Shown: one piece after another, positions 16,901 through 62,410 of the stretch | Position numbering within the stretch: the stretch's first letter is position 1 | Layout of the letters: each line of letters begins with the position of its first letter | Origin: Hypanus sabinus | Lineage: Eukaryota | Length of the DNA stretch: 64,000 nucleotides | Direction of reading: 5' to 3' | NCBI RefSeq assembly: GCF_030144855.1 | Contig: NC_082724.1 | Coordinates: 34,534,001-34,598,000, forward strand | Program-made: the position numbers and the translations under genes | Notes under the pieces: model-generated | Told to the model about the DNA's origin: nothing | Seen by the model: only the letters and a program-made list of their open reading frames with translations | Database searches by the model: none

Positions 16901-19900
16901 GGCTATCTCTATGCCCTTCCTTGAATAAGGGAACAATATCCGCAACCCTCCAATTCTCCGGAACCTCTCCCATCCCCATGGATGATGCAACGATCATCAC
17001 CAGAGGCTCAGCAATCTCCTCCCTCGCCTCCCACAGTAGCCTGGGGTACATCTTATCTGGTACCAGTGACTTATCCAATTCGATTTCATTTTCCCAATTC
17101 AAAGAAAGAGAGGCCAATTGTAATCTACTCCCCAACCAAATCTATAACCGCTAAGTAGGACTGATATTTCTAACAGTAGAGATGAATGAATTCAGTGTTA
17201 GCATTTTGAAGAATATGATTATGATGTTAAAATTTGCACTTGAGCTGAAAATAAATAGTATATACCTTAAGTTGTAGACGCAACTTGGGAATTTCATTCA
17301 CTTTCTCTTGCAGTTCATCATTCTGTGTAGTTAATTTGACAAGTTCCTCAGCCATGATAGCTCGACTTCTTTCGAGATTGGAAATTTCAAGCTGCAAAAA
17401 CAAAGCTTGATTTAGTTGATCTATATTATTTTTTGAAGATAGAAAAGATCAAGGAGATTCATTTAATCATTAATTTGGCAGTACAAAAAATAATTAGAAA
17501 GATGCAAATAATATTCCTGCTCACTCTTCAATGGATTGGTTTATATTAATAGAACAATTAATATATTCTGCAGTTATTTGAAGAAATTTGAAACCTAATA
17601 TCCAAGATAGCTTCAAAACCTGTCTGATTTCATTTTCAAGATAGTTCAAATTCAAAGCATCTGATTTTTTTTTTAGGTTAATAAAGCTAAATTAAGTGAC
17701 AGCTCACTGCTTCAGGTGTTACTGCATGGAACTCACCAAGTAATGCTGACTTAACACTTAGAATAAACGAAAAAAAATCTAAATAACCTTGAAGTTTTAT
17801 GCACAACATATGGCTAACATAAATTCAGAAAAATCACACATCTGATACACAATGCTTTATGTAATACAGTCACCCCCTCCTTATCCGCAGGTTCCGCATG
17901 CACGATTCAACCAACCGTGGATTGGAAAACCCGGAAGTTCTCTCTCTAGCACTCATTGTTTGAGCATGTACAGACTTTTTTTTCTTGTCATTATTCCCTA
18001 AACAATACAGTACAGACAGTCCCCGAGTTACAAACGTCTAACTTACGGACAACTCGTACTTATGAACGGAGAGAGGAGAACGCCGTCCGCCATTTTAAGT
18101 CGTTGCCATTAACACTGTGTTCAGTGTTTAACTTTGTATTTAGCTTAAATATTTCTTAGCAGGATTCACCCTGACCCCGCCACTTTTCCAGTCAGCACTG
18201 CCCCCATTTGTCCCTTCTCAGTGCAGGTAGACTTTAGGACCCAGAGCAGCACAAGATCCACTGCCCATGGCTGCTGCTGTATTTTTTTATTATTAAGTGT
18301 GATCGTGAACAATAGCCAGATCAGAAATGCTGATCAAGTCAGCTAGTTCCTAGAGGGAATTCTGGTGGGCCAATCAGACGGTTCACTGCTGCTCAGCAAT
18401 AGAACATAAAACCCACAGTTTTCTGTTCCATTGATAGAAAACGATCGCAATTGAAATTAAAGTGGAAATAATAAAGCAATTGATAAGAGGTGAAACGCCA
18501 TCGGTCTTTGGAAAAGCTTTAGGCTACAGTCAGTCAACGATCGGAACAACTTTAAAGGAATCAGGTAAAGGATAAAGTGAGAATAATGGAGCATGGGAAA
18601 GGCCCTGCCCCGCTGAAAGCTACAATTATTACTAAGCAACGCAGTGGTTTAATTATTGAAATCCATACACTTCTTAAGTGTTTTATATGCATAGAAAGGT
18701 AAAATATATACTATATAGTAAGACAAACGTTTGACTAACTGATGCTAAATAATACCGGGTGTACCAGTTCCAACTTGCGTACAAATCAGACTTAAAGACG
18801 GACTCAGGAACGGAACTCGTTCGTAACCCGGGGACTGCCTGTATAACAACTATTTACATAGCATTTACATTGTATTAGGTATTATACATAATCTAGAGAT
18901 GATTTAAAGTACAGGCAGTCCCCGGGTTACGAACGAGTTCCGCTCCTAAGTCCGATGTGTATGTAAGTCGGAACAGGTACATCCGATATTATTTAGCTTC
19001 AGTTAGTCAAATGTTTGTCTTATTATATAGTATATATTTTACCTTTTTATGCATACAAAACACTTAAGAAACATATGTATTTCAATAATTAAGCCACTGC
19101 ATTGCTTAGTAATAATTGTAGCTTTCATTGGGGCAGGGCCTTTCACATGCTCCATTATTCTCACTTTATCCTTTAAAATTGTTCCGATCATTGACCAACA
19201 GTAGCCTAACGCATTTCCAATGACCGATGGCATTTCACCTTTTTCCGATCACTTTATTATTTCCACTTTATTTTCAATTGTGATCATTTTCTGTCAATGG
19301 AACAGAAACACTGCAGTCTCAGTAGCCGCTGCAGGCGGCCGGTCCTCAGCTCCCCCGGGTCCTAAAGTCCATCTGCACTGAGACAGGTTAAATAAGGGAC
19401 TTGAGCATCCACGTTTTATGGTATCTGCGGGGGGGACCTGGAACCAATCCCCCGCGGATAAGGAGGGCCAACTGTATGTATCAGTCTCATTGCTAATGGA
19501 CAACAGGAACTGCTTAAGATGTCAAATCCATTGAAGGCCATTAGTAATGGACTATAAATCCCAGATTCCAGTAATAAAAGATGTCAAACATTATCCTCAT
19601 ATACATTATTTATTAGTTTAATGAGCAAAAATGGGAGGGAATAGTTTGCAAATAAAATTGAAAGGCACATTGTGCCTTCAATACAAGACCACCAAGAAAT
19701 TACCTAAAAATATTAATAATCTTCCCAAACATCAATGAGGAAAACTATAAACAACACTCACGAAAATTACCTAGAACATTCAATGCTGGCTATGTTTACA
19801 AAAAACAACAATCCTGTTTTAGCATACTCTTTGTGGATAATAATTCTGCCAATATCCAAATTGATACAACCTGCCAAGCTACCTACAATCAATCCAATTC

Positions 19901-40900: not shown

Positions 40901-43900
40901 TTACCTTCTATAAATTGGACTCAAACACTAAAGCAATCTTTTTTCTACATTTGCAGGTACTTTAGCAAAGCATTACTCTTGCATTAATGGTGGATAGAAT
41001 CGAGAACTATGATTCACATATAGAACAAAACCTAAATCTGACTTTGATTCCTTATTCTGCCTTACCACTATTTTATCACAATTATCAGTGTTTTTAATAT
41101 CCCAAGTAACTGAAATATAAGAAATACCCACAACCAGAAGATTTTGCTTTACGAGTCCTCAATAGTGGCAGAAAGGATCAAATATTGAATAAAAATAAGA
41201 ATTACTAGAGGTTACTAGAAGTGCTGACTTAATGCCCAAGTAAAATATTTTTATAGCCTATCTATACAAATGTTTACATTTAAAATGAAAGATATACTCT
41301 GGAACACAAAACGAATAAAATTGTTATGAATACAAAGAAAATATCCTATTGTCGCCTTTGACATAATTTCAAAATCTTAGATAAATCAATTAAGCCAAAT
41401 TTAAGAATTTGTTCATTCCACTCCTGTACTTTCAACAGCACAGTACTCTATTTCTCAATGTGAAACAGGAAGCGACTTTGTAATTCTGCAAGGAGGGTGT
41501 TGTGAGGGTGCAGTGACACAGGAGAGGCGTGGGACACTGAGAAACGAAGCAACGTCATTTGGTTCCAAACAATTGATTTATTGATCATTACAGAATTTCT
41601 CTCAGGTGCTTCCCGCTCTCCCCTCTCCCTGCCCACTTCCCACACCTAGTCAATAATACTCATATCAGAGTCAGATCTATCATCATTTACATATGTCCTG
41701 AGATTCGTTTTTTTTGTGCTGCAGCACTACAATGCAACATACAAAATTACTACAGTACTGTGCAAAAGTCTTAAGCACTCTAGCTATATATATGTGCCTA
41801 AGAATTATACACACGTCTGTATAAAAAGAATATGATTTTTTGGGAAGTGTTTTCTTCTATCACCCCGAGTAGCCTGTACTGTAACCTTGTACATCTAAAG
41901 CAAGAGCAAGTTAATGAACCTTACTTACTCTTTCAGGTTATCAATTGCCTCCTCCAATGCAGCTTTATCTTTGCTAACAGACAACAATTGCGATTCTCTC
42001 TTTTCCAACTTGTCTGTCAAGTCATCAATAATCTGAAGACCATCAAAGGATAAATATGAATAATATTCCATCTTCAAAACCAGCTTTAGCAATATAAAGC
42101 AAGCAAATCTGGGCAGGACAGAATTTCAAAACAATGCTTTATCGTCAAGGGCTGGTAATCAGCCAAAGTGAAGAGCATAATTCAAAGACTATCTCAGCCG
42201 ACGTTCACTATCTCATTTCAGGATCACTTTGCCTGCGCAATTAGATCTTAACTGGACAGAATCTTTACTAATCAGATTATGGGAAAAAGATGCTGCAGGA
42301 CAACCTGTGGAACATGGGATGGAGAAGAGACTGAATTCTATCTGCACCTCAACTGGTAATGACCTAGATTAAGTAAAAAGGACATTGGTTCATCAAATTC
42401 CAGATATTTTATCTTACAAATCTAAACTAAGAGTGTCACATTGTCATCTTTAAAGCATATCTGCTCTCAGGGAAAATACTTTTAGCAAAATATTGGAACT
42501 CTAGAAGGAAAGCAAAATTGAATCTTTAGAACTATAACCTGTACTCACACTGTAATTAAGAACAGAGGACACAGCCTCAGAATAGAGGGCATTTTAGAAC
42601 AGAGATGAGGTGGAATTTCTTTAGCCAGAGAGTGGTGAATCTGTGGAATACTTTGCCACAGGCAGCTGTGGAAGCCAAGTCTTTTATGTATATTTAAGGC
42701 AGAGATTGATAGATTCTTGATTGGTCAGGGAATGAAGGGATACGGGGAGAAGGCCGGAGATTGGGGATGAGAAGAAAATTGGATCAGCCATGATGAAATG
42801 GTGAAGAAGACTAGATAGACCAAATAGCCTAATTCTGGTCCTATATTGTGGCTCTAATGTAATTCTATATTCAAGTCTGCATAAATATTTTAACATCAAG
42901 ATTACCATGTAAAATTATGATATATATCATGAATAAGTTTACCTGCTGTAAATGAAATTTTTCAGATTTACTACTGGGTTGGCATTCATCTTCAGCAGTT
43001 CCTTTCATTGGCCGGTTAAGTACTGTACATTCTACATTTTGATTCTCAATTTCCGTCAGACTAAGTACAGGCAGGACCTCCGGCTGATCACTGTTCACTG
43101 GTGTGGCACTTCGGCCACTCTCTTCCATCTCACTTTCATCCAGTACGCTCTCTTTCTGAGCATCCCTCGTGCTCTCTTCCATCTCACTTTCATCCAGTAA
43201 GCTCTCTTTCTGAGCATCGCTTCTGGTCTCTTCAACATTCTTCACTGGCACACCAGCTGACGAACCATTATAGATGGTCTGAGTAAGCGATCCTGAGGCC
43301 ACATTACATCCTCGACCTGAAGTTTCATCATCGGAATTGATCTCACTCACACTCCGGCTGTCTAACGACTGCACACTAAAAGCATCTATTCTCTCAAAAG
43401 CATCTGAGGAACTGCAGCTCTCAGTAAGTTTCTGATATTCATCCAGATTATGATACTCAGGACAGGCTGACGTTGACAGCAACTGAAAGGATGTCTGCAT
43501 CAAATGCAGATTAGCCTTTGAATCTACAGCTTCCTGTCTAGAACTTGCTGAACTCTCACTAATCACACTCTCATGGTCCAATACCTCAATGTCACTGGTA
43601 GTCGATGTCCCTGATGAAAATGTACTAATGGGGGGAGAGGGCGTGTTACTTTGCCGGTCCTCAGATTTTTGCTCTTTTGCTTCCAGAAGTGAATCCTTCG
43701 CAGAAGCAGTGCGGGATTTTGATGGACTGTCAGGCGGGCTTGCAGATTTTTCTGCATTTTTCTGCCCCTTTTCGACCCGAGAGGCAACCAATGCATTTGG
43801 CTTGATTACTTCAGAAGTTACAGGCGCATGCTCATCTCTTGCCACAATAGACTTTACCTCATCTTTATTCTGTGGCTCCGCACTTTCGAGAGACTTGGGA

Positions 43901-46900
43901 CTTTTAGCCTTTCTGCTAAGCAGCTGGTGATCACTCAACTGACCCGTGACCTCTGAATCATTGTGTACTTCCTGAGGTACAGCTGTTGAGTCCTCAGTGG
44001 AATTTGCCTTTTCTGGCACATTTAACTCAACAGATTCCGTGAGATGAATAGTCAACGTTGCCTCTACTTCTTTGGGCAGTTGGGATTTGCTTGGGGGCTT
44101 GGACACAACTGAAGTTTGCTCTATAATTGCAGTATCTGTTGAATTCAGAAAGGCATTGAAGAATGTCTCCGATTCATCCACCACAGTTCGTGTAACGGGT
44201 TTGGTAATAGCTTTCGGTGAAGCCACAGGGTGAGGTTTGGGGTTGTCATCTGATGATCCCCATTGTGTGGAAACCCATCCTTCATTGATTGAAGAGGTTT
44301 TGCCTGGCAATATTACTGTAATTTAAAATAAACAGGATATTAAATCAAAGAAAACTTTCCATTCCTATGTATTTTCATAAATACAGTAATGTTTCTGTAG
44401 CATTTTACTGAATTACTGAAAGCATAAGGCAATTTGTTCCCAATGCAATAACCTTTGGAAATCAGCATCTTGTAAAAGAACACAGACAAGGACAGAAGAG
44501 AAGGGCTTTTATGGAAGCTTCTGTAGCAAGACAGGGTACTTAAAGTGTGTACTGATCTGGCAGCACTATAATAGGGAGGATGTCATTATACTGCAAAGGT
44601 GCAAAAAAAAAAGGTTTACAAAGATATTACCAGGACTGGAGAGTTTGAGCTATATTGAGAGGCTGGATATGGGTCTAGAACTGTTTCCCCTGCAATGCAG
44701 GAAACTGAGGGATGACCTTAAAGGAGTTGTAAAGTCATGAAGGTCATAGACAGGGTGAATAGTTAGGGGAGTCCAAAACTATAGGGCGTAGGTTTAAAAT
44801 GAGAGGAGAAACATTTAGAAGGGAGCTTCTTCCCCACAGAGGAAGTGGTAGATGTGAGGGATTATTACAACATTTAAAAGACATGTGAACAGATACATAA
44901 AGATATTTCAAGAAATTTGTGTCCACCCAGGATTTCAGAAGATTTATATTTCATGTGAAGGGGAAGGAGTGCAAGCTAGCAGGTAATAGGGAAGACCAGG
45001 TGAGAGGTAAGATGAGATGAAGTAACAGGCTAGGTGATGCAAGAGGCAAGAAGCTGAAGGAGGAGGAATCTAACAGGACAGAACAGTGAACCATAGAAAA
45101 TAAGGGGGAAAAGGAGGGGAACCAGGAGGTTGTTACAGGCAGTGAGAAGGGATGAATGGGTAGCCAGAATGGGGAATGGAAAAAAGAGAGGGGGGGGGGG
45201 GGGAGTAGTTACAGGAAGTAAGAGAAATCAATATTCCTGCCATCAAGTTGGAGGCTACCAGTCTCGGCCTGAACTGTCAACTATTTATTCCCCTCCTTAA
45301 CCTGAGAGGATTCATTCCTGAGAGATGTTTGCATGTAGTCAACAGTACATGGGGATAGAGATGGAGAGGCAATGGATACACACTGAATGGTAGAAATCCA
45401 ATAATTGTAAAACAGATGAAGTCGCTGAAGGCAGCAAAAGTTGGTTATGGCAAACACATTTTACATATATATCATGCCAATCCTTAGCACAGAACAGAAA
45501 ATCCTGGAGGTCTTGCTAGAAATATACAGAAGACTGCAGAGCCTAGTTAAGAGTTCAACATACAATACTAGCCACTAAAAACAAGGACATGATGCCACTA
45601 GATAGTAAACAGAAAAAAGATTTACAAGGCTTTCAGAACTGGATCTAAGCTAATAGGATAAAATTATAAAAAGCCTCAAAAGAGACTACTTATCTTGGCA
45701 GACAGGTTTAACAGAGAGCAGATTAATGAAGAGGAGATGAGAACTGCTTACAGCCAGTTGTCTTGGACTCGCTATCTGAAGGAGTAGTAGCTGCAGTAGC
45801 CATACACCTTTTAAAAAATGTGAATCACTTGATGTCCATGAAATCAGAAGGCCATGCAAACTGCAAATTAATCTGAATATCATACAGCCCTGATGGGCTT
45901 GGTGTCCTCTGTGCTGAAAAAGTTGTGTGGATAGGCAGGAGTTTACTTTCAGGATGTAAAGTTTATTCTCACTAGGGGCCACATAATATTGGCAGAGCAT
46001 AAGGAGACACAAAAACAGCATTCATCAAGTTTGCAGGCATTTATTTACACCAACTGGATGATATTTGCGTGTGGTGAATAATGCCAGTATTATCTTGAGC
46101 AACGCACACAAAACGTTGGAAGAACTCAGCACGTCAAGCAACATCTCTGAAGGGAAATGAACAGCCAAGAGCCTTCACCAGGACTGATAAAGAAGGGGGC
46201 AGAAGCCAGGAAGTTTTTTGTCCGAAATGTCCCCAAATGGTTCAATGCAAGAGAAAAACACAAGCTCGAAATACATCCCTGCTTCCGACCTGCGATTCAA
46301 TGGGAAAGGGGGCTCACGTTACAGGAAGCCACAGTCTAAGGAACACAACCCGTCTGTAATATGGGGGAGTAGGGCACGTAGCTTGTATGTGTACAGAGTC
46401 TACCTCTCTGGCCCTCTGCAGCCTGAGCAAAGTACAGGTTTCAGACAACATAGCACATAAACCTGCTCCGATAGTCCTCCACAGCTAACTGAACTAGGTC
46501 ACAGCTTTGCCAGCCATGATAGTAGTTAGTCAATAATAACACTTAAAATACATGAAATCCCCGATAATTAAAAGCTATTAAAATGGAAGCAAGTAAAACT
46601 GTTAATAAAAATCATTTTTAATCATAATTTTTTTAATTGGTAATCCGAGAAACATTAAATGAGTTTGCCTGCTTCTCTTTAGCCTCCTGAATTTTTGCTG
46701 TACAATTCTACTGAAATTAACAGCATCTTTGGTTCTACAGCAGAACTAACTTGTAGCTGGATCAACTAGGCATTTCCCCAAGAATAAGACTTGCAGTAAA
46801 CCTCAGAGTTCTGCATTTCAAATCATCTACGAAATCTAGGAAATATTTTGGTTTCAGCACTGACAACTCCTCTCAGAACTGCTTGGCATGACCTGGGCCA

Positions 46901-49283
46901 AAATGTGTTTGATTCTGTATAACCTGGAAACACTCAGCATTAGGCAGCAGCTGTTAAAAGAGGCACAGTTAATATTTCAGAGCTATTTTCAAGAAAATCT
47001 TTCAGGTCCAAGACCGTTCATTAGAACTGCATTAGAAAACAAGTTAGTTTCAGTAGTGGAGATGGTAGCAAAGAATGAAATATTCCTGTCTGCCTTGCTG
47101 GGCCAGTCACAACTCTTTAACATTAGCAATACATTACGCAAAGAAACATAATCTGCAACTTAACTGAACAGTACCATTTGTTGACACCCTAGAAATGTTC
47201 CCTTTGCTCTACACATTACAACATCTGAAACTTGAAACATTTCTACTTGCATGGATGCTGTGCGACCTGTTGAGTGCTCCCAGTATTATCTGTTCATTTT
47301 TTTTTCCTGATTTTCACTTTTTTCATTTTAAGCACTTGCCATCTAGTGGCAGAAATACTCAAAATGTTAAGATGTTGATCTCAAGTCATAGAATAGTAAT
47401 GTCAAAAAAAGAACTGCACGACTTTCAGTGAACTGAGTGCTTTACGGTTGTGGAAAAATCTATCAGCTGAACTAAAATGATTGTAGACTCAGCACTGCCC
47501 AAATGATCAACACTTACTCAAGATGGTAGATGTTACGATGGTTCACAGAAAGCAACTTTAGCTTTATAAATGCTCTCTGCATTTTATAGGTGGAATTGCA
47601 TAGCATCCCCAGAGACACTCTGAAGTTAATACTGGGCATGGACTTGGCGTCACTTGATAAATTGTAAACAGCTAAAAGGTACCAAAACTAAGTCCAGGGT
47701 ATGTCAAACACCAGAATATTTTTACCACGGCACACTAAGGAACACTGCCCAAGCTGCCCAGATTAAATCCTGATCTCCAGGTGTTTGGGGAGTTTGCACA
47801 TTCTCTTTACAACCATGTGGGTTTCACATAAAAGCTCTGGTTTGCTCCAACATACCAATAAGTTTGGAAGGTTAATTAGTTACTACACATTACCCTAGTG
47901 TAAGAGGAGTGGGAGAAAGATCCATTGAGTTAATGGGCATGAGACAGGAACATTAGTGAGGGACCAGGACTAATAGAACCTGCCTGATACTCAACACGTT
48001 AAATTGTCTCAGTCACAAGGAAATAAAACCTATAAAATATTTTTTTTTTTAAAAGGCAAGACACATCAGAGTAGCTTCCATTTTAAAATGGAAATATATG
48101 GAATAGGTTAGATATGGAAGTTATTCATGTTATTTGAACATATTCACCACCTTAGTTTTTTTTCTAACTTTTATCATTAATAGCCAAGCAAGAACTATTT
48201 AAGACCTATATTACTTGCAAATCTCTACCACTATGACTATAAAGCAGCTAGATTTGCGGAGCTGCAAGTTGACTGGCTACACCATTCTGCTCTGGAGAAG
48301 TACATAACTGGCCCTTAGAACCTGTCTTTGCAGAAATAGCACGAGAGGGGAGAGCCACTTACTCTCCAGTAATCAGCACTGTTGCATTATCCCAGCTTAC
48401 CATTTTTCTTTAAGGAAATGAATGGTCTAGTAAAGTCACTGTTGGTAAAGTCACAATACTGCAGCTAACCATTTGGAAATGTGATTTCCTTCATAATTCG
48501 TCAAAATCAACAAAATGTAGAAATGTAGCTATCAATTCAAATGTAGAAACTAGTGAAATACGGATAGAAAACAAAAGATCATTCTTACATGTGAACACAG
48601 CCAATGCACAGAAAACTAACTTTTCAATCTGCTAAACTGTTTACCTCACACTTAATGTAAGGGCTCCTGTATTAGCTACTAAATTCATCATACTAAAGAC
48701 TCTGCATTTCCAGATCCGCAAATTACTGCACCTAACATTACATTCCAGACGTTCATAACCGAACAAACAAGCGTATTGTTTCTTCCTGAAATTCAGCAAA
48801 TCGCCTTTATTCTGGTCTTTAATCTTCAATCCCTCTGCCACAGGGATTCCCCTAGATCTGATAACTTCACAACTTTAAATTAAGTCTCTCTCCCAGACCT
48901 GCTCTGCTCAAGGAGATACCCCTAACTTCCACAGGAGAAAAAGTCCCTCGTTTCCTAGAAAAGTGCACAAGTACTTAAGTTGCGGTCAAAGAGCACCACA
49001 TCGGCGTTTCTCAATCTTTCCTTGGTGAGACAGATAAAGACAAAGAGGGCACCGCTGGCTCCGTGCATCGCACAGCTGTATCGCGGAGGGCGGCCGCTCT
49101 CCCCTCCCTGAAGAGTAGAGGCAGCAGTCCAGTCACTGTACCTTCCTCATACTCCGCCGAGATACCAGTCCACGGGCCCCCCTCGTCCTCCTGGATGTCC
49201 AAGACCCTATCGATGGACTTCTGAGCCTGGGACAGCGCCTGTTTGGCGAAACTCGACAGATGCGAGGCGTTGAACCAACTCAT
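13831..49283 (-). CDS. TMF1: TATA element modulatory factor 1 (golgin TMF/ARA160), 17 coding exons, 1155 aa
   Basis: N-terminus MSWFNASHLSSFAKQALSQAQKSIDRVLDI; C-terminus LQMYGEKAEEAEELRLDLEDVKNMYKTQIDELL; all introns GT-AG with consistent phases; exon lengths sum to 3468 nt. Confidence 0.97.
15729..16462 (+). mobile_element. Tigger/pogo-type non-autonomous DNA transposon inside CR1
   Basis: TA TSD (15727-28, 16463-64); TIRs cagcatgtccccgagttac / gtaacccggggacagcctg; residual CENP-B-type HTH ORF 16091-16315 (ITIENKVEI...ALGYSRSTIRTILK). Confidence 0.85.
16636..16814 (+). mobile_element. 5'-truncated retroposon (SINE/LINE 3' end) with 11-bp TSD
   Basis: caaatgttcat at 16625-16635 and 16815-16825 flanks a 179-bp insert in CR1; orientation inferred. 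Confidence 0.7.
17266..17391 (-). CDS. TMF1: TMF1 exon 16 (126 nt)
   Basis: ttgcag|LEISNLERSRAIMAEELVKLTTQNDELQEKVNEIPKLRLQLK|gtatat. Confidence 0.95.
17867..19474. mobile_element. MER2/Tigger-like MITE carrying two nested Tigger-type inserts
   Basis: TA-flanked TIRs cagtcaccccctccttatccgc / gcggataaggagggccaactg; inserts at 18013-18841 (TA TSD, both TIRs) and 18912-~19392 (inverted, one TIR). Confidence 0.85.
21166..21318 (-). CDS. TMF1: TMF1 exon 15 (153 nt)
   Basis: tttag|DDLFENSF...LYDVLRMGAESSIFENLQSQLKQREGEIAQLQ|gtcagt. Confidence 0.95.
22800..23221 (+). mobile_element. Non-autonomous RTE-derived retroposon (5' leader fused to 3' tail)
   Basis: 5' ccttgtcatggtttggaagcttgtgtgccttaatga resembles the RTE/Expander/BovB leader; 3' ttcattgctgcccc...gggcagcaagt; imperfect 9-bp TSD atcctacca/atccaacca. 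Confidence 0.6.
24375..24494 (-). CDS. TMF1: TMF1 exon 14 (120 nt)
   Basis: caaag|ERKLLTNQGPEALTVTPTLSRSSSVSGAEMAILQTSSHSQ|gtagga. Confidence 0.92.
24621..24713 (-). CDS. TMF1: TMF1 exon 13 (93 nt)
   Basis: attag|NALSKQLEVEKLKVEQERKKAILAQDALKEK|gtattt. Confidence 0.95.
24793..24862 (-). CDS. TMF1: TMF1 exon 12 (70 nt)
   Basis: ttcag|(R)NRVAFDNLKSEYIKALEESKKEK|gtaaca. Confidence 0.94.
26001..26136. repeat. Palindromic short repeat (36-bp perfect arms); family recurs in the window
   Basis: gctggaggaactcagcaggccaggcagcatctatgg (26001-26036) vs its reverse complement (26101-26136); related copies near 3095, 46105, 50050, 53386, 60170. Confidence 0.85.
27558..27750 (-). CDS. TMF1: TMF1 exon 11 (193 nt)
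   Basis: gttag|ADGQAQLAAAVEKER...EDENS(R)|gtgagt. Confidence 0.95.
28937..29093 (-). CDS. TMF1: TMF1 exon 10 (157 nt)
   Basis: taaag|RLQEADNRNQELSQSVTSASRPLLRQIENLQATL...WEKLEKNLSNRL|gtaact. Confidence 0.95.
29737..29829 (-). CDS. TMF1: TMF1 exon 9 (93 nt)
   Basis: tatag|VADLRLGLQRAEQQQARKEDYLRQEISELQQ|gtattc. Confidence 0.95.
30527..30830 (+). mobile_element. Tc1-derived MITE fragment
   Basis: Starts cactcagtggccacttt...aggtacac (Tc1-type terminus); other end not found. Confidence 0.5.
30971..31127 (-). CDS. TMF1: TMF1 exon 8 (157 nt)
   Basis: ttcag|ELAELHRVNAAKDSEAQEAALSHE...EALAVQ|gttagt. Confidence 0.95.
31716..31882 (-). CDS. TMF1: TMF1 exon 7 (167 nt)
   Basis: ttgcag|VLDGKEEVEKQHRENIKKL...RSLQSALDNSY(K)|gtaaga. 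Confidence 0.95.
32199..32341 (-). CDS. TMF1: TMF1 exon 6 (143 nt)
   Basis: ttcag|(G)EKLSKQHLHNSNIIKKLR...IKHLQQ|gtgaga. Confidence 0.95.
32415..33195 (+). repeat. 5' LTR (781 bp)
   Basis: TGTTACG...CGTAACA; TATAAAA 32685-32691; AATAAA 33107-33112; about 26 substitutions and 3 small indels vs the 3' LTR by eye. Confidence 0.93.
33200..33223 (+). promoter_or_regulatory. Primer-binding site, degenerate tRNA-Pro type
   Basis: TGGGGTTCTCGTCTTGGGATTTGA just after the 5' LTR resembles the Pro PBS TGGGGGCTCGTCCGGGATTTGA. Confidence 0.7.
33311..35315 (+). pseudogene. Disrupted gag-protease of the LTR element
   Basis: LVPPFEETDVDSYFLLFEKVA, LRSYELVPEAYRQKFR, LRELILIEEFK; stops at 33938 and 34382; CFNCG..GHIASRC split by a frameshift in the G run ~34434-34440; RDTGA and VLLGNDLAG protease motifs. 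Confidence 0.9.
35312..36067 (+). other. Unassigned 251-codon ORF inside the LTR element (TTG start in the track; may be a frameshifted continuation)
   Basis: Open frame with no integrase DDE, RT YxDD or RNase H motifs recognised. Confidence 0.4.
36485..37263 (+). repeat. 3' LTR (779 bp), preceded by PPT gaagaaaggggg (36473-36484)
   Basis: Direct repeat of 32415-33195. Confidence 0.93.
37489..39089 (+). mobile_element. Full-length Tc1 (IR/DR type) transposon with pseudogenised transposase
   Basis: TA TSD; ~210-bp imperfect TIRs starting cagtggcatgcaaaag with inner direct repeats (~37683-37703, ~38880-38898); GYKKIA, SGRPRK, WTDE, QDNDSKH, WPSQSPD..IENLW motifs; start codon mutated (ATC) and frameshifts. 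Confidence 0.93.
39559..39664 (-). CDS. TMF1: TMF1 exon 5 (106 nt)
   Basis: tttag|ELKVLKAELATRFTSNETADLVREKDEQIRGLLEE(G)|gtagga. Confidence 0.95.
40524..40650 (-). CDS. TMF1: TMF1 exon 4 (127 nt)
   Basis: atgaag|(D)EMIRLKEESTSISSLKDEFTQRIAESEKKTQLACKERDDIKK|gtaagc. Confidence 0.93.
41929..42032 (-). CDS. TMF1: TMF1 exon 3 (104 nt)
   Basis: ttcag|IIDDLTDKLEKRESQLLSVSKDKAALEEAIDNLK|gtaagt. Confidence 0.95.
42943..44315 (-). CDS. TMF1: TMF1 exon 2 (1373 nt)
   Basis: tacag|..ILPGKTSS...TVVDESETFFNAFL...FSSGTSTTSDIEVLDHESVISESS...SVSEINSDDE...KFHLQQ|gtaaac. Confidence 0.96.
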
Positions 49284-49550
49284 AGTGTGGACCGCCCCAC
49301 GGCGCCCAGGCCCAGGCCCAGGCCCTCCGCAGCGGAAAGCCGGCCAGGACCAGGGTCAATCGTCGTTCTACAGCTGACGGCCTATATCCCTCTCACCGCC
49401 ACGGCCGACCCTGCACCCTGTCAAGGTGACACTGCCGCCCCGACACTGACTTGGGCTGTGAAAGGCGAAACTCCGATTATCTCTTCAGTGTCGCTCGCAA
49501 CTCTCCACGTAGCAGCAATGACGCGACTCCCAAGCATCCCTGCGCCACGG
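49000..49550 (-). promoter_or_regulatory. TMF1: TMF1 CpG island spanning promoter, 5' UTR and exon 1
   Basis: High GC and CpG density around the ATG; (CCCAGG)3 at ~49305-49322; CCACGT and TGACG motifs at ~49505-49523. Confidence 0.75.
49142..49283 (-). CDS. TMF1: TMF1 exon 1 coding part (142 nt)
   Basis: MSWFNASHLSSFAKQALSQAQKSIDRVLDIQEDEGGPWTGISAEYEE then G|gtacag. Confidence 0.96.
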
Positions 49551-49912
49551 CTGTGCCCCGCACTCCCGTCAGGCAACGCAACACTGCCCCGCTCTCCCGG
49601 CAGGCGACGCAACTCTGCCCCGCACTCCCGGCAGGCGCCGCAACCCTGCCCCGCACTCCCGGCAGGCGCCGCAACCCTGCCCCGCACTCCCGGCAGGCGC
49701 CGCAACCCTGCCCCGCACTCCCGGCAGGCGCCGCAACCCTGCCCCGCACTCCCGGCAGGCGCCGCAACCCTGCCCCGCACTCCCGGCAGGCGCCGCAACC
49801 CTGCCCCGCACTCCCGGCAGGCGCCGCAACCCTGCCCCGCACTCCCGGCAGGCGCCGCAACCCTGCCCCGCACTCCCGGCAGGCGCCGCAACCTTGCCCC
49901 GCACTCCCGGCA
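49551..49912. repeat. 31-bp GC-rich minisatellite, ~11.7 copies
   Basis: Unit ccctgccccgcactcccggcaggcgccgcaa; 8 identical central units, 3 diverged gene-proximal units, one partial. Confidence 0.97.
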
Positions 49913-50711
49913 TTGAGAAGCGCCCTTTGATCTGTGCACAACTTGTTGATCTGCTGGCACATCGAAATGTCTGTAGGTTGCTACATCCCGAGCTGTTACA
50001 AACAAGATGCTGTAAAATCTGTAGACATTGAAAATCAAAGTAATAGAGCATCTGTGGAAAAGAGTCTTGGCCCGAGCCGTCGACTGTACTTTTTCCCATA
50101 TATGCAGCCTGGCCTGCTAAGTTCCTCCAGCATCTTGTGTGTTGCAGGAGTAGGTGCTGAGGGACGTACTGGAGCTTGGTGCGGCCATCACAGGGACTCG
50201 GTGATGAAGGGCCCAAAAAGCCCCAAAACCCTCCTGGACCGGGAGGGGCCCTCAGTTACCGTAGTCGTGAACCGACACCGTGTCCACATGAGTAGCAACA
50301 GTCCTAATGGTTGTAAGGAATGCGATAGAACACCACACAATGTAAGAATGAAACACATTGCACTGTTTAATCTTGTTAATATTGTTTTATTATGAATAAA
50401 GATTATTTTGATAGATTAAAAAAATCTTCCCCCAACTGTTTTCAACATATTAACATGCTTCCTTAATTTCACAGGTCTTCAGATGGGGTTTCAACAATGC
50501 CCTCCCAATATAACTGAAACATAATTTCCCTATGTATGTATTCAAATCCACCAGCAATAGCAGAAACATATAATTATCATATTTCATAATGACTTGCCCT
50601 GACTCCACGACATCTCAGAATACTGCTTTTTTCTCTAAAATTGAATATTCCCTACATTGAATCGTGTAAGGTAAGGGAAACAAGTAGGGTAGTTATGGAA
50701 ACTATAATGAT

Positions 50712-52830
50712 CTTTTGTATATTATTTATTTATTAAATTTTAGAAATTACAAAGAATAAATGTGATGATAAAATAGTAAGAAAAATAATATTAACCCTCC
50801 CCCTCCCCTTAACCCTTATCTAAAGAAAGAAAAAAAGGAAAGAAGAGAAAGATTGCCTGGATATCGGAGGATCCCCACATGCTCCCTGGAGTTCAAAATA
50901 ATTTTGATATTTATTTTTACTTCCCCCAATTACTATAATTTTATCTTCAAAGGACCGATGTATTTAATCCTACCTTTTGTAAGTATGGGAACCAAATTTT
51001 CCAAAATATATTCATTTCTTAGATTATACGTAATTTTTTCAAGTGGAATACAACTATGTATTTCATTATTCCAATGATCCATAGTTAAATATAAATCAGA
51101 TTTCCAAGTAACTGCGATAACTTTTTTGGCTACTGCCGATGCAATTTTTATAAATTTTTTCTGATACTTATTCAGAAAAGGGTTTTTATCACAAATAACC
51201 CTTCCAAAATTAAATTTGGAAGAACAGGAAGGATTAGATATGCCCTTTACATCAAAAGAGGTTGAAGAAGCTTTAGGATCACTTCAGAGTAATAAATCCC
51301 CAGGAGAAGATGGTTTTCCTCCTGAGTTTTATAAAAAATTTAAAGATTTATTAATTCCTCCTTTTATGGAATTAATATACCAAGTGGAAAGAATGCATAA
51401 ACACCCACAATCTTTTTTAACAGCGATCATAACTGTATTGCCAAAAAAAGATAGAGATCCTTTAAAACCAACATCATATAGGCCTATTTCCTTGTTGAAT
51501 ACAGATTATAAAATACTAGCAAAAATTTTATCTAATAGAATATCTAAATATTTACCAAAATTAATACATATGGATCAAACAGGTTTTATTAAAAATAGAC
51601 AATCAATGGATAACATAACCCGGTTACTTAGTATAATTCACTTAGCACAAAAAAAAGAGGAAATGAGTGTGGCAGTTGCTTTGGATGCAGAAAAAGCATT
51701 TGATAGATTAGAATGGGATTTTTTATTTAAGGTATTGGAAAAATATGAGTTAGGAAAATCTTTTATACAATGGATTAAAACTTTAAAAACTAATTCTCAA
51801 GCTAAAGTAGTTACAAATGGTCAGATTTCAACACCATTTTGCTTAACAAGGTCAACTAGACAAGGCTGCCCGTTATCACCTGCTTTATTTGTATTGGCAA
51901 TAGAACCATTAGCTGAATTAATTAAAACAGATTCAGATATTGGGGGCTTTAGAGTTAATCAAGAAGAATTTATCAAGAATTAATCAAGATTAATTTATTT
52001 GCTGATGATGTTTTGATTTATTTAACAAACCCATTGCAATCTTTGCAAAGATTATCTTTTAGATTGGAAGAATATGGGAAAGTATCAGGCTATAAAGTAA
52101 ATTGGGATAAAAGTGAAATTTTACCCCTTACCAAAGGAAATTATAATCAATGTCGATTAGCAACTCAATTTCGATGGTCAATAAATGGGATAAAATATTT
52201 AGGTATTAGAGTTGATAATGATGTAAAAAATTTATACAAACAAAATTATTTGCCATTATTTAAAAAAAGAGGATCTTGATAAATGGATGATGTTACCAAT
52301 AATATTAATAGGTAGTTAATGCTGTAAAAATGAATATATTTCCTAGATTGCAATATTTATTTCAAACTTTACCAATACAATTACCTCAGAAGTTTTTTCA
52401 AGAACTGAATAAATATGTAAGGAAATTTCTTTGGAAAGGAAAGATGTCAAGAATATCACTGGAAAAATTGACATGTAAATTTGATTTAGGAGGGTTACAA
52501 CTTCCAAATTTTAAGAATTATTATAAAACAAATCAACTTAGATTTATTGCGTCTTTTTTTGATGAAGAAAAACCTGCATGGATTAGAATAGAATTAGAGA
52601 AGATTTTATATATAAATGGGAATCCAAATGGATACGGGAAAAAAAAAGAATCTCCTATATTAAGACACTTGATTGATTTATGGAATAAGGTAAATATGGA
52701 TGATGAGATAAAGAAATCTTTATTAGCAAAAAGAACTTTAATTCAAAATAGGCTTATTCCTTTTACAATGGATAATAAACTTTTACATAATTGGTTCCAA
52801 AAGGGGATTAAATATATAGGTGATTGTTTT
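50712..52830 (-). mobile_element. L1-clade LINE, 5'-truncated with inverted 5' segment
   Basis: Minus strand 50712-~51174 is the ORF2 C-terminus (AVAKKVIAVTWKS..W..IPLEKITY) plus 3' UTR and A-rich tail; plus strand ~51175-52830 is RT (KSPGEDGF, SYRPISLLNTDYKI, LDAEKAFDR, TRQGCPLSP, FADD); 14-bp TSD. Confidence 0.9.
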
Positions 52831-53385
52831 GAAACTATGATGATTAAAGAAGAGGAAGTACTGGCGCTTTTAAAGAATATAAAAGTGGATCAATCTCCGG
52901 CTCCTGACAGGATATTCCCTAGGACCTTGAGGGAAGTTAGGGTATAAATAGCAGGGACCCTGACAGAAATATTTCAAATGTCATCAGAGACAGGGATGGT
53001 GCTGGAGGATTGGCGTATTGCTCATGTGGTTCCATTGTCTAAAAGGGGTTTTAAGAGTAAACCTAGCAATTATCGGCCTGTCAATTAGACATCAGTGGTG
53101 GGTAAATTAATGGAAAGTATTCTTCGAGATGGTATATATAATTATCTGGATAGACAGGGTCGGATTAGGAACAGTCAACATGGATTTGTGCGTGGAAGGT
53201 CATGTTTGACAAATCTTACTGAATTTTTTGAAGAGGTTACTAGGAAAGTTGAGGGTAAAGCAGCGGATGTTGTCTATTTGGACTTCAATAAGGCCTTTGA
53301 CAAGGTTCCGCATGGAAGGTTAGTTAGGAAGGTTCAATCATTAGGTATTAATATTGAAGTAGTAAAATGGATTCAACAGTGGCTG

Positions 53386-58875: not shown

Positions 58876-60361
58876 GTCAGGATGCTCTCTACCGTGCATC
58901 ACCAGAGTGACTGGAGTATAGATGTACATAGACCAGCTCTCCTCAGATATTAGAGGCACCGGTGAGCTTTCCTGATTGTGTATAATGTCTTCTGGGACCC
59001 AGGAGTTTGAAACTGCTGGCAATTTTCCCTGATGTAAGGGGAGGTGTGAGTGGTTCAAGCTGATAACCATCTTGTTTGTCCTGTTGACATTTCGGAAGAG
59101 GTAATTTGGCTGGCACCAGGCCTCGAGCTCTTTCGTCTCCTCTCTGTAGGCCGTCTCATCGTTACTGGTGCCCCACCATCATTGTGCACTAACACAGGAG
59201 CTGAGAGCCATGTAAATCAGCCAGGCTCACACTGGATGGCAGGTGGGCAGACGTGAGGGGCCTGGTGGCCGACTCTTGCTCCTATTTTTGTTGTGTTCTG
59301 TGCAGTACATGTTACACCCCGGGGTTCACAGAGAGACAAATATCACTGTATTGATACTGGAAAAGCAGTCTTTTATGACATCATGTCTCGATCTCCATCA
59401 TTAAGGACTCTCACCACCCTCCTCTCATTACTACCATCGGGGAGGAGATAAAGGCGACTGAAGACACACTCTCAACATTTCAGGAACAGTTTTTTCCCTC
59501 TGGCATCAGATTTCTGAATAGTCCATGATCCCGCAACCACTATCTCATTAATTATATTGTTCTCTTTTTGTACTATAATATATATTTATTTATCATATCT
59601 GATAGTTATATTTTATATATTGCACTATACTGCTGCTGCAAATCAACACATTTCATAACATATATCAGCGAGAATAAACCTGATGCTGATTCTGACTAAA
59701 CTTAGTGGTAGTCCAAATCACGGTGTGGTGGACACCTGTGAGCTCAACCAAATTTAGTCCAAGACCTCAGCTTATGTATTGAGGGGCACACAAAAGCTGG
59801 GTGCATTCACTGCTTGAGCCCTATGAAGGAGCACATTTTGAGGTGAAATCGTGAAGATTAACTTAGTGAATTATAGCTGATAACATGCTACAGGAATAAC
59901 CCGCCGTTACGAAAATATTCCACTTAAAAAAAACGTTTATGTATAAAGTATCTTTTGAAAAACACACACGATAGGCCATTAAAATTAAAGTAGGAAACAA
60001 GTTAGTTTCCATGCACTGCATGTGTGTAAATAGTTTCAATACGTGATCAAATAAATTGTTGTGTTCTTTCATAATCAAATGTCCTGTATCATACACCCTT
60101 GGAGGTCGACCGGGGCGGGGTGGTGGTGCTACCTCCCCGAAAAGAGTTTTTGCAGGGTGGGATGTCTGTTTACTCTTCCATAGATGTTGCCTGGCCTGCT
60201 GAGTTTCTCCAGCATTTTGTGCGTGTTGCTCCGACACGGTATTTTAATGCTGGACTGAAACCCAAAGCAACTTGAAATCAGAACCGAAGGACAAAGACCA
60301 GTTAATAAATCAACATTCACAGTAAACCTTCCACCGACCACGCAGCTTAATGCCTCGATAC

Positions 60362-60458
60362 TGCGCCTGCGCAAACCTGCGACGCGCAATGCTGCCTACA
60401 GCAACCCCGTTACAGTGACGTAGGCCTGATTAGCATACTATATCCCATAATCCATCTC
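60362..60458 (+). promoter_or_regulatory. snRNA-type distal sequence element (DSE) cluster
   Basis: NRF1-type TGCGCCTGCGCA 60362-60373; CRE-like TGACGTAG 60416-60423; octamer variant ATTAGCAT (=ATGCTAAT) 60429-60436; SPH/ZNF143-like TATCCCATAATCCATCTC 60441-60458. Confidence 0.75.
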
Positions 60459-60568
60459 TTTAAACTTTGTTTTAATATATTTGTCGGTTTAGAAGGTTTA
60501 TATAAGAACAAATTATGGAAAGTATTATTATATATAATAATACTAAATGTACTGAAAACAATGGTTTA

Positions 60569-60588
60569 GTCGCTATCAGTGTGAAGTG
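60569..60588 (+). promoter_or_regulatory. Proximal sequence element (PSE, SNAPc site)
   Basis: GTCGCTATCAGTGTGAAGTG resembles vertebrate PSEs (TCACCNTNASTGTRAAGT type); about 110-140 bp downstream of the octamer/SPH; no TATA between PSE and the N run. Confidence 0.7.
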
Positions 60589-60614
60589 TAAGCAATTTCT
60601 AGACCTGGGCTCCC

Positions 60615-60776
60615 NNNNNNNNNNNNNNNNNNNNNNNNNNNNNNNNNNNNNNNNNNNNNNNNNNNNNNNNNNNNNNNNNNNNNNNNNNNNNNNNNNNNNN
60701 NNNNNNNNNNNNNNNNNNNNNNNNNNNNNNNNNNNNNNNNNNNNNNNNNNNNNNNNNNNNNNNNNNNNNNNNNNNN
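60615..60776 (+). ncRNA. Inferred Pol II snRNA-class gene hidden in the 162-nt N run (~130-145 nt; U4, U11, U4atac or U8 size class)
   Basis: Body not visible; inferred only from the flanking DSE, PSE and 3' box at canonical spacing. Confidence 0.6.
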
Positions 60777-60779
60777 ACA

Positions 60780-60793
60780 ATTCAAAAAATAGA
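60780..60793 (+). terminator. snRNA 3' box (Integrator processing signal)
   Basis: ATTCAAAAAATAGA vs consensus GTTYN0-3AAARRYAGA (only the first base differs), 3 nt after the N run. Confidence 0.65.
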
Positions 60794-61149
60794 TCGAATA
60801 CACTTTCACTGGTTGTTTCTTAGTTCTGTGATTTCCAACGCCTTGCACCTTTGACCCATCCTGTTACAGCGTATCAAAGGCGTTACTTTTAACTCCGCGT
60901 CATGTGATCAATTGGTATCACATGATAGAGCGCCGTGTAGGCCTTTTCAACCAGTTACTGCCTGCTCCGACAATCGTTACACAAATGGTATAAGACTGCA
61001 CAGTTACTGATTTTAGGATTTTCCTCCCAAAAATATACTTTATTCAGAATATTACAAAATAAAGTTATTTACATAAAAACCATTGGTTAACTCTGAGTCC
61101 TTATTCAATAAATAAATAAGCAGATGATTTAGGCTTTGCTTCAGAAAGA

Positions 61150-62410
61150 TGAAATATTGAGGGGGTGGTGGTGACTGGAGTAAAGAGAAAACAGAGCTTG
61201 AGCTGGAAAGCATGGAATACTGGGTGAATCTTCACATATGATGGTGGGTGAAGTGTATAAGAGGCTCTGTTGATAGCCTTTTCTACTACAACTGCTCTCA
61301 CTTTTTGGCAGAGTCGATCAGCCTGCCGGGCATATATGGTTGCTGAGTGTGTCCTGGCCCATCTCCGCTTGTGCATTGGACCAACTGCTCAGCAGCAGGA
61401 ACTTCCATTGGAGCGGGAAATATTGATGGCTGGAATCTGCTCTGGCATTTGAAGGGAGGCATGCCAGTGGAAGATGACTGGAGGTAATTGTGGGTGATCT
61501 TTGCCAAGACAAGTTGGGAGCTCCAGGTGGTGGTGGTGATGAAAGGCACAAGTCAGCACATCCTACTCCTGATTCATTCTCTCAATCAGGCCATTAGTTT
61601 GAGTTTGGTAACCAGATGAGAACAGAAATCTTCCGAAAACGGGAAGTGAGCTATGGTCCTCGAACAGACACAATATCCCAGAGGAGGTCATGCAGCCTGA
61701 ACTCGTGCTGAACGATGAGCTTGGGGGAGAGTAATGAAGCAACTGCTTTGGAGCACAATTACCAGAACAGCAGTGACAGAGGCAGATGAAGGCACCAAGA
61801 GGTGGGGCTAGGGGCGGTGAGGCACAGACAGTGGGGCAACGTCTTGTTCTGAGCAAAAGTGGGACAGACAGAGACAAAGTCGTGGAATCTTGGGACATAG
61901 ACATCCACCAAAATTAACTCTGTATAAATTCCAGGGTCTGTTGAAGAGAGACCCCACTCCAACACTCAGGGGCCCAAGGTGGCAGAAACAAAAAGCAGGT
62001 TGGGAGGACCCCACCTGGGCCTGGATCTGACTTTTTTTGCAGCTCACCTCTGCTTCTATTCCCTAAATCACCGGAGCAGCTTTGCACAAGCAAGGAATGA
62101 CAAGTTTTGTCCTCAATGGTATCAAACTGACGAAGAGAGCATAGATCTTCGTGTTTTTGCTGCCAGGTCTGTCGATGGGGGGAAACTAAACTGGGTGAAG
62201 AAGAGAGCCCATTGGCTTGATGAAAATGTCATGAATGCAGGAGAGGCTTGTGGGATCTCTCTATACCATAAATGGGGGCTCTGCACCCTCCAGCCAGTGT
62301 CGCCGTGCTTTCAGGACCTCCTTGACAGCCAGAAGTTCTCAGTTTCCGACAATGGGGTGGGAAAGAAAATCTACAGAAGAGCATTAGCAGAGTGCAGTTC
62401 CTATGGCAAC
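61150..62410 (-). mobile_element. Highly decayed Gypsy (sushi/chromovirus-like) pol fragment: RNase H to integrase
   Basis: RHWLEGAEPPFMV, FVSVCPTFAQNK, SSGYQTQTNGLIERMNQE, INRASYTL..KIHPVFHAFQLK. Confidence 0.8.

What the first reader, a model, noticed from the sequence alone, without database searches (positions are those of the whole stretch)
60362..60793. Complete snRNA-gene control architecture around the N run: a hidden Pol II small nuclear RNA gene
Seen, in order on the + strand: NRF1-type site (60362), CRE-like site (60416), octamer variant ATTAGCAT (60429), SPH/ZNF143-like TATCCCATAATCCATCTC (60441), PSE-like GTCGCTATCAGTGTGAAGTG (60569-60588), no TATA, 162 Ns, then 3'-box-like ATTCAAAAAATAGA (60780). 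Established: vertebrate Pol II snRNA genes use an Oct-1/ZNF143 DSE near -200, a SNAPc PSE starting near -60, and an Integrator 3' box 9-19 nt past the RNA end; Pol III type-3 genes add a TATA box and end at a T run. Inference: TSS near 60625-60635 and 3' end near 60761-60771, so a ~130-145 nt RNA if the N length is true. That fits U4, U11, U4atac or U8; U1/U2 are too long and U7 too short. I know of no snRNA gene upstream of mammalian TMF1, so it may be a lineage-specific locus or an undescribed snRNA-type RNA. Its identity cannot be read here.
Basis: partly seen in the sequence, partly recalled or inferred. Interest (0 to 1): 0.88.

Follow-up and report, generated by a model that had tools for sequence, protein, structure and literature searches.

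The report
Probable small nuclear RNA gene hidden in gap
The control signals of a small nuclear RNA gene do sit on both sides of a 162-letter unread stretch 11 kb upstream of a stingray's TMF1 gene, so an ordinary snRNA-type gene is probably hidden there. The RNA itself cannot be seen and the case stays circumstantial.

Summary
Taken singly, they are weak. The PSE-like site (9 of 12 consensus positions) recurs about once per 350 nt. An octamer plus SPH pair is expected about 1.6 times per window by chance. The full ordered set is expected 0.08 times per window.

Three observations carry the case:
- The only full composite in the window brackets the window's only N run. My estimate of the chance of that, given a gap, is about 3e-6.
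- There is no TATA at the fixed distance after the PSE.
- Both flanks form one CpG-preserved patch (observed/expected 0.94, against a window median of 0.32 and 0.26 in the neighbouring decayed transposon).

If the N length is true, the implied RNA is 125-139 nt. That fits U11, U4atac or U8, with U4 at the edge.

I put about 0.6 on a Pol II, SNAPc/Integrator-type small RNA gene, most likely an ordinary known snRNA. Its identity cannot be read, and filling the gap was barred, so I did not attempt it. The rivals are an ordinary unmethylated promoter or an exapted LTR with chance PSE and 3' box matches, and pure coincidence. Earlier notes of this scan report U1 and U6 copies elsewhere in this genome, but nothing at this locus.

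The parts
60362..60373 (+). NRF1-like palindrome TGCGCCTGCGCA, about -270 from the predicted start. Not typical of snRNA enhancers; it may serve a divergent transcript.
   Evidence: 11 of 12 positions; two sites in the window against 0.08 matches expected.
60416..60423 (+). CRE-like TGACGTAG (complete TGACG half-site)
   Evidence: read directly from the sequence.
60429..60436 (+). Octamer variant ATTAGCAT (ATGCTAAT on the minus strand); predicted Oct-1 site of the distal element, about -205
   Evidence: 1 mismatch to ATTTGCAT. Such near-matches occur about once per 560 nt.
60441..60459 (+). SPH / Staf (ZNF143)-like site, 5 nt from the octamer, about -192
   Evidence: 15 of 18 specified positions of YYWCCCRNMATSCMYYRCR. 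There are 24 such matches in the window against 13 expected, 11 of them in one tandem repeat.
60460..60569 (+). AT-rich spacer (20% GC) between the distal and proximal elements; holds TATATAAG at 60499 and a perfect 24-nt AT palindrome at 60521-60544
60570..60587 (+). PSE-like site TCGCTATCAGTGTGAAGT; predicted SNAPc site, which puts the start near 60632-60636
   Evidence: 9 of 12 positions, the best match within 60440-60600. This quality recurs about once per 350 nt.
60588..60614 (+). TATA-less interval after the PSE. The place where a Pol III type-3 TATA box would sit (about 60603-60610) reads ACCTGGGC.
60615..60776 (.). Run of 162 N. It would hold the last ~18 nt of promoter, the whole RNA (125-139 nt if the length is true) and the first few nt of the 3' flank. 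Not read.
   Evidence: only N run in the window; geometry; no partial Rfam match in either flank.
60780..60793 (+). 3'-box-like ATTCAAAAAATAGA; predicted Integrator processing signal
   Evidence: 11 of 12 positions of GTTY-N2-AARRYAGA, starting 4 nt after the N run. Matches of this quality occur about once per 3.9 kb.
60225..61000 (.). CpG-preserved, non-repeated patch spanning the N run; presumed unmethylated regulatory island
   Evidence: CpG observed/expected 0.97 (left flank) and 1.02 (right flank), against 0.53 and 0.26 further out and a window median of 0.32; no other copy in the window.

Best explanation
A TATA-less, PSE-dependent, Pol II-transcribed small RNA gene of the vertebrate snRNA type lies on the + strand, with its body inside the N run. 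It is intergenic, 11 kb upstream of TMF1 and divergent from it.

Inferred mechanism: Oct-1 and ZNF143/Staf bind the octamer/SPH pair near -200 and help SNAPc onto the PSE near -55. With no TATA box, Pol II rather than Pol III is recruited. Transcription starts near 60632-60636. Integrator then cuts the nascent RNA just upstream of the 3' box at 60780-60793.

If the N length is true, the RNA is 125-139 nt, which fits U11, U4atac or U8, with U4 borderline. The most likely content is an ordinary known snRNA or snoRNA of that class.

Shown: the motifs, their order and spacing, the absence of a TATA box after the PSE, and the CpG-preserved patch. Inferred: factor binding, the start site, the 3' end, and the existence and identity of the RNA.
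For: - Motifs and coordinates are verified.
- The published layout is a DSE with ATTTGCAT plus a Staf site, a PSE, and a 3' box; Pol III genes add a TATA box at -25 (PMC5493778). The human U6-1 PSE spans -65 to -48 (PMC9652321).
- The only full composite on either strand of the window is this one, and it brackets the only N run.
- From the motif densities, I estimate the chance that a given gap has a PSE-like site within 70 nt to its left, a 3' box within 25 nt to its right and an octamer/SPH pair 100-220 nt further up at about 1.5e-6 per orientation. That is my arithmetic, with post-hoc thresholds.
- CpG observed/expected is 0.94 over 60225-61100, against a median of 0.32 and 0.26 in the adjoining decayed Ty3/gypsy remnant. 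This points to long-term protection from methylation, as at active promoters.
- The patch is not repeated elsewhere in the window.
- No Rfam match protrudes from the gap, as expected if both RNA ends lie inside it.
- The implied length of 125-139 nt falls in the real snRNA range.
Against: - The RNA body is unread.
- The PSE match (3 mismatches, including two in the conserved TCACC core) has no discriminating power.
- The octamer/SPH pair alone is expected 1.6 times per window, and the full composite 0.08 times per window, with thresholds set after seeing the site.
- NRF1 sites are typical of mRNA promoters rather than snRNA enhancers.
- A canonical TATATAAG lies between the DSE and the PSE.
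- A second promoter-like cluster (CRE half-site, E-box, CCAAT, E-box) lies 110-150 nt to the right of the gap.
- The patch abuts the end of a Ty3/gypsy pol remnant, at the place where its 3' LTR would lie.
- If the N run is an ordinary assembly gap, there is no reason for it to fall on a 130-nt gene, and its length is unreliable.
- This species' own PSE profile could not be consulted.
Confidence: 0.6

Rival explanations
1. An ordinary unmethylated Pol II promoter or enhancer patch, for example for a lncRNA, a divergent transcript pair or an exapted LTR. It uses the NRF1, CREB, ZNF143 and E-box/NF-Y-type sites, and the PSE-like and 3'-box-like strings are chance matches. The N run is then simply a gap inside it.
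For: - The NRF1-like site is rare in the window.
- TGACG half-sites lie on both sides of the gap, and an E-box/CCAAT/E-box palindrome lies at 60900-60925.
- TATATAAG sits at 60499.
- ZNF143 sites are widespread in mRNA promoters (established knowledge).
- CpG observed/expected is about 1 on both flanks.
- The PSE match is uninformative.
- The patch adjoins a Ty3/gypsy integrase tail.
Against: - It needs a near-perfect 3' box (1 per 3.9 kb) to fall by chance 4 nt after the gap, with the octamer/SPH pair at the snRNA distance from it.
- GC is only 0.39, so this is not a classical CpG island.
- No exon, ORF or Pfam domain that such a promoter could serve lies in the 3.2 kb to the right, which is decayed transposon.
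- The CpG level differs sharply from the adjoining gypsy remnant (0.94 against 0.26), which argues against a passive LTR of the same age.
Confidence: 0.25
2. Pure coincidence: non-functional intergenic DNA in which consensus-like strings happen to surround an assembly gap.
For: - Every single motif is common by chance, and the full composite is expected 0.08 times per window.
- The scan read very many windows.
Against: - The composite and the sole gap coincide.
- CpG preservation is in the top ~5% of the window's 400-nt windows on both flanks. The other such windows I looked at (16-19 kb, 32-37 kb, 49-50 kb) are repeat copies, a young LTR element or the TMF1 CpG island; those at 601 and 4601-5400 were not examined.
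Confidence: 0.1
3. A Pol III type-3 gene (of the U6, U6atac, 7SK, RNase P/MRP RNA, Y RNA or tRNA-Sec kind).
For: - It would share the DSE and PSE architecture.
- A weaker PSE-like site (4 mismatches) at 60461 is followed by TATATAAG at 60499, 20 nt after its end.
Against: - No TATA box lies 15-18 nt after the better PSE; that place reads ACCTGGGC.
- With the weaker pair, the SPH site would abut the PSE instead of lying about 150 nt upstream, and no T run follows before the gap.
- The right flank shows a 3' box rather than a T run.
Confidence: 0.03

Closest known systems
Vertebrate Pol II snRNA-type genes (U1, U2, U4, U5, U11, U12, U4atac, U7; U3, U8, U13 snoRNAs)
   Same: Octamer plus SPH/Staf distal element near -200, PSE-like site near -55, no TATA box, and a 3' box immediately after the presumed RNA. 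The implied RNA length of 125-139 nt matches U11, U4atac and U8.
   Different: The RNA itself is unread. The PSE departs from the mammalian TCACC core at two positions. The octamer is the ATGCTAAT variant. An NRF1-like site lies upstream. No snRNA gene is known beside TMF1 in mammals (from my own knowledge; a literature search found nothing relevant).
Human U6 (RNU6-1) type-3 Pol III promoter
   Same: An SPH site next to an octamer, an AT-rich spacer of about 110-150 nt, then a PSE. From memory, the human U6 promoter also has a TGACGTAG string in its spacer.
   Different: U6 has a TATA box about 17 nt after the PSE and ends at a T run. Here that position has no TATA, and a 3' box follows the gap.
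ZNF143/NRF1-type housekeeping mRNA promoters
   Same: NRF1-like, CRE-like and ZNF143-like sites clustered within 100 nt in a CpG-preserved patch.
   Different: Low GC (0.39), no downstream exon found, and a near-perfect 3' box at snRNA distance.

Membership tests
Vertebrate Pol II snRNA-type gene | Distal element with an Oct-1 octamer and/or an SPH (Staf/ZNF143) site about 200-260 nt upstream of the start | tested here: met
   Octamer variant (1 mismatch) at 60429 and SPH (15 of 18) at 60441, about -205 and -192 from the predicted start. The match is at motif level only; such a pair is expected 1.6 times per window by chance.
Vertebrate Pol II snRNA-type gene | PSE (SNAPc site) centred near -55 | tested here: inconclusive
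   9 of 12 consensus positions at 60570-60587, with mismatches in the TCACC core. Matches of this quality occur about once per 350 nt. This species' own PSE profile was not available.
Vertebrate Pol II snRNA-type gene | No TATA box at about -30 to -25 | tested here: met
   60588-60614 has no TATA; 60603-60610 reads ACCTGGGC.
Vertebrate Pol II snRNA-type gene | 3' box GTTY-N0-3-AARRYAGA, 9-19 nt past the RNA end | tested here: inconclusive
   The motif is met (11 of 12) at 60780-60793. The distance to the RNA end cannot be measured because the end lies in the N run.
Vertebrate Pol II snRNA-type gene | An RNA body of a known class (Sm site, or C/D boxes; Rfam match) | not testable with these tools
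   The body would lie in 60615-60776, which is all N, and filling it was barred. No Rfam match in the flanks.
Pol III type-3 gene (U6, 7SK, H1, MRP, Y, tRNA-Sec) | TATA box at a fixed 15-18 nt after the PSE | tested here: not met
   No TATA after the PSE at 60570. The alternative pair, a PSE-like site at 60461 with a TATA box at 60499, is poor (4 mismatches) and abuts the SPH site.
Pol III type-3 gene (U6, 7SK, H1, MRP, Y, tRNA-Sec) | Termination at a run of four or more T | not testable with these tools
   The RNA end would be inside the N run. The first T run in the right flank is at 60887.
CpG-island mRNA/lncRNA promoter | CpG observed/expected above 0.6 with GC at or above 0.5 over at least 200-500 nt, and a downstream exon | tested here: not met
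   CpG observed/expected is 0.94 but GC is 0.39. No exon or domain was found to the right, only a decayed Ty3/gypsy remnant.
3' LTR of the adjoining Ty3/gypsy remnant | A matching second LTR, a polypurine tract and TG...CA ends, and the same age as the internal region | tested here: inconclusive
   A second LTR would lie beyond the window end. A GGGAGGAAAA tract lies at about 61021-61030 (minus strand), but no TG follows it. CpG decay differs sharply, 0.94 against 0.26, which argues against a passive LTR of the same age.

The most novel reading that the evidence does not exclude
The N run hides a PSE-driven, Integrator-processed small RNA that belongs to none of the described U-snRNA or snoRNA families: a ray-lineage-specific snRNA-type gene next to TMF1.
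Probability: 0.04. Interest if true: 0.7.

Novelty: new member of a known kind. Interest (0 to 1): 0.25.

Why it matters
If the reading is right, an snRNA gene is missing from the annotation of this stingray assembly only because its body is unread. It may be the single-copy gene of a minor-spliceosome RNA such as U11 or U4atac, or of U8. That matters for complete non-coding RNA catalogues of cartilaginous fishes, and it would give one more example of the vertebrate snRNA promoter layout in an early-branching lineage.

It would not change how these genes are understood. The more general point is one of method. Consensus matches to the PSE, octamer, SPH site and 3' box are individually near worthless. 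Only their conjunction with the gap and with CpG preservation carries weight.

Tried and rejected
- **Rfam, whole window at gathering thresholds:** nothing.
- **Rfam, 59900-61300 at E up to 10:** only three chance-level hits, to fungal, protist or bacterial families, none touching the gap edges.
- **Minus-strand gene in the gap:** rejected. There is no composite on the minus strand, and the reverse complement of the left edge has no 3' box.
- **U1 filling the whole 162 N:** rejected on geometry. The PSE would sit at -45 and the 3' box 2-4 nt after the RNA end.
- **Overlapping contig ends (a false gap):** no shared sequence between the edges.
- **Flanks as a repeat family:** no other copy in the window. 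The SINE-like tail ends at 60224.
- **Protein-coding use of the patch:** ORFs crossing or flanking the gap are short and have no Pfam match apart from a transposon integrase SH3 domain.
- **Earlier notes of this scan:** none at this locus, and no PSE description for this genome's U1 genes.
- **Literature:** nothing on a PSE profile in cartilaginous fishes, or on an snRNA gene beside TMF1.
- **ESM Atlas search of the large TMF1 exon:** uninformative. TMF1 was confirmed through Pfam domains in later exons instead.
- **Sigma-70 promoter and intrinsic terminator scan:** does not apply to a eukaryote.

Full report
**Setting**

The window carries TMF1 on the minus strand. Its first coding exon starts at 49283 with MSWFNASHLSSFAKQAL... 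inside a CpG island at 48800-50200. Its large exon is 42871-44310. Later exons give Pfam TMF_DNA_bd (32190-32372, E 5e-12) and TMF_TATA_bd (13834-13974, E 1.5e-15).

The finding lies 11 kb upstream of that start codon, on the other strand, in intergenic DNA. To its left are LINE reverse-transcriptase ORFs (51216-52947) and a SINE-like tail that ends at 60224. To its right is a decayed Ty3/gypsy integrase tail on the minus strand (61101-61376, SH3_Tf2-1, E 4e-4). Earlier notes of this scan call the genome a stingray.

**The observation**

I scored them against the consensus strings printed in PMC5493778:

| Element | Coordinates | Match |
|---|---|---|
| Octamer variant ATTAGCAT | 60429-60436 | 1 mismatch |
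| SPH/Staf site | 60441-60459 | 15 of 18 specified positions |
| PSE | 60570-60587 | 9 of 12 |
| 3' box | 60780-60793 | 11 of 12, with a 2-nt spacer |
| NRF1-like palindrome | 60362-60373 | 11 of 12 |

The N run, 60615-60776, is the only one in the window.

'No TATA' is correct for the 26 nt between the PSE and the N run. The place where a Pol III type-3 TATA box would sit reads ACCTGGGC. However, a canonical TATATAAG lies at 60499, in the 20% GC spacer between the distal and proximal elements. A perfect 24-nt AT palindrome lies at 60521-60544.

**Continuity across the gap**

The program's note asked for this to be tested first.
- The two edges share no sequence, so this is not a pair of overlapping contig ends.
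- Both flanks have the same unusual property, CpG observed/expected of 0.97 (left) and 1.02 (right). The next stretches outward have 0.53 and 0.26, and the window median is 0.32. That fits one continuous patch interrupted by the N run.
- The real length of the gap cannot be tested here. Earlier notes mention other N runs of odd lengths in this genome (267 and 187), so lengths in this assembly are not a fixed placeholder. Whether they are accurate is unknown.

**Is it more than chance?**

Taken singly, no. In Markov-1 simulations equivalent to both strands of one window:
- PSE matches of this quality occur 365 times, about 1 per 350 nt.
- Near-octamers occur 228 times.
- 3' boxes occur 33 times.
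- SPH sites occur 15 times.
- An SPH site with an octamer within 40 nt occurs 1.6 times.
- The full ordered composite occurs 0.08 times; 6% of simulated windows have at least one.

With thresholds set after the fact, the architecture by itself would therefore not be convincing.

The conjunction is what carries weight. The real window has exactly one full composite on either strand, and it brackets the one N run. Using the densities, I asked how often a given gap would have:
- a PSE-like site within about 70 nt to its left;
- a 3' box within 25 nt to its right;
- an octamer/SPH pair 100-220 nt further up.

The estimate is about 1.5e-6 per orientation. That is my own arithmetic and is rough.

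The prior that a random gap lands on one of a few hundred snRNA-type genes is of a similar order, about 1e-5 by my estimate. The motif evidence alone therefore gives roughly even odds.

CpG preservation then moves the odds towards a functional element. Only about 8% of 400-nt windows reach observed/expected of 0.75 or more. Most of the others lie in repeat copies (16-19 kb), a young LTR element (32-37 kb) or the TMF1 island; I did not examine those at 601 and 4601-5400. The patch here is not repeated in the window, and it contrasts sharply with the CpG-decayed transposon next to it.

**What it most likely is**

I read it as a TATA-less, PSE-dependent Pol II small RNA gene.

The human U6-1 PSE spans -65 to -48 (PMC9652321). 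Placing the start of this PSE at -62 to -66 puts the transcription start at 60632-60636, about 18-22 nt into the N run.

If the N length is true, the RNA is 125-139 nt. From my own knowledge of vertebrate snRNA lengths:
- This suits U11 (about 135), U4atac (about 130) and U8 (about 136-140).
- U4 (about 145) sits at the edge.
- It excludes U1, U2, U3, U12, U5 and U7.

No Rfam match protrudes from either edge, which agrees with both RNA ends lying inside the run.

The mechanism is inferred from established knowledge and is not shown here. Oct-1 and ZNF143/Staf at the distal element help SNAPc bind the PSE. The lack of a TATA box selects Pol II. Integrator cleaves upstream of the 3' box.

**What counts against it**

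- The PSE has mismatches at two positions of the conserved TCACC core, and this species' own PSE profile was not available.
- NRF1 sites belong to mRNA promoters rather than snRNA enhancers.
- A second promoter-like cluster lies 110-150 nt to the right of the gap: a CGTCA half-site and a TCATGTGA / CCAAT / TCACATGA palindrome at 60900-60925.
- The patch lies where the 3' LTR of the adjoining gypsy remnant would be. A GGGAGGAAAA tract is present on the minus strand near 61021-61030, but no TG follows it, and the CpG contrast argues against a passive LTR of the same age.
- If the N run is an ordinary assembly gap, nothing explains why it should fall on a 130-nt gene.
- Earlier notes report readable U1 and U6 copies elsewhere in this genome, so snRNA bodies are not systematically masked.

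**Rivals**

- **Ordinary unmethylated promoter or exapted LTR with chance PSE and 3' box matches: about 0.25.** It explains the NRF1, CRE and E-box sites and the CpG patch. It needs a 1-in-3.9-kb motif to land 4 nt after the gap, and it has no exon to serve within the window.
- **Pure coincidence: about 0.1.**
- **Pol III type-3 gene: about 0.03.** The fixed-distance TATA box is absent. The alternative pairing of a 4-mismatch PSE at 60461 with the TATA box at 60499 would put the SPH site against the PSE.

**Comparison and novelty**

In layout this works like the known vertebrate Pol II snRNA genes. Membership cannot be completed, because the defining RNA body is unread and the PSE test is inconclusive.

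I know of no snRNA gene beside TMF1, and the paper library held nothing on one. Because snRNA gene positions shift freely between vertebrate lineages, that is weak ground for novelty.

The most probable outcome is a new, so far unannotated, member of a known kind. An undescribed RNA class is possible but unsupported (about 0.04).

I did not try to learn the letters of the N run by any route. That step is referred.

Noticed in passing
window 49554-49912: A 31-nt tandem repeat, 11.6 copies with 97% matches and GC about 0.72, lies inside the TMF1 CpG island just upstream of the exon-1 ATG (49283, minus strand). Each unit carries an SPH/ZNF143-like string, ACTCCCGGCAGGCGCCGCA (3 mismatches to the Staf consensus). 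This could be an array of ZNF143-type sites in the TMF1 promoter.
   Followed up: partly
window 32415-37238: A young LTR element lies between TMF1 exons. Its direct repeats of about 750 nt are 93-100% identical, 4068 nt apart. It has gag-like ORFs on the + strand (33311-36067) and CpG observed/expected of about 0.9, so it was inserted recently.
   Followed up: no
window 60900-60925: A 26-nt palindrome, TCATGTGATCAATTGGTATCACATGA, has two M-box/E-box-like half-sites around a CCAAT box and is preceded by a CGTCA half-site. It lies 125 nt to the right of the N run and may be a second regulatory cluster in the same CpG-preserved patch.
   Followed up: no
window 60521-60544: A perfect 24-nt AT-only palindrome (AGTATTATTATA/TATAATAATACT) lies in the 20% GC spacer between the distal element and the PSE-like site. 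TATATAAG lies at 60499.
   Followed up: partly
window 61101-62000, minus strand: A decayed Ty3/gypsy integrase tail (SH3_Tf2-1, E 4e-4; a GYQTQTNGLIERMNQE-type core motif) with CpG observed/expected of 0.26 lies directly to the right of the CpG-preserved patch.
   Followed up: partly
window 4601-5400 and 16000-19300: Further stretches have CpG observed/expected of 0.8-1.1. The second coincides with nested inverted and direct repeat copies (16-19 kb). The first was not examined.
   Followed up: no
window 43118-43225: The large TMF1 exon contains a 54-nt tandem duplication (93% identical). It encodes a repeated acidic peptide of the ...DAQKES.LDESEMEES... type.
   Followed up: no
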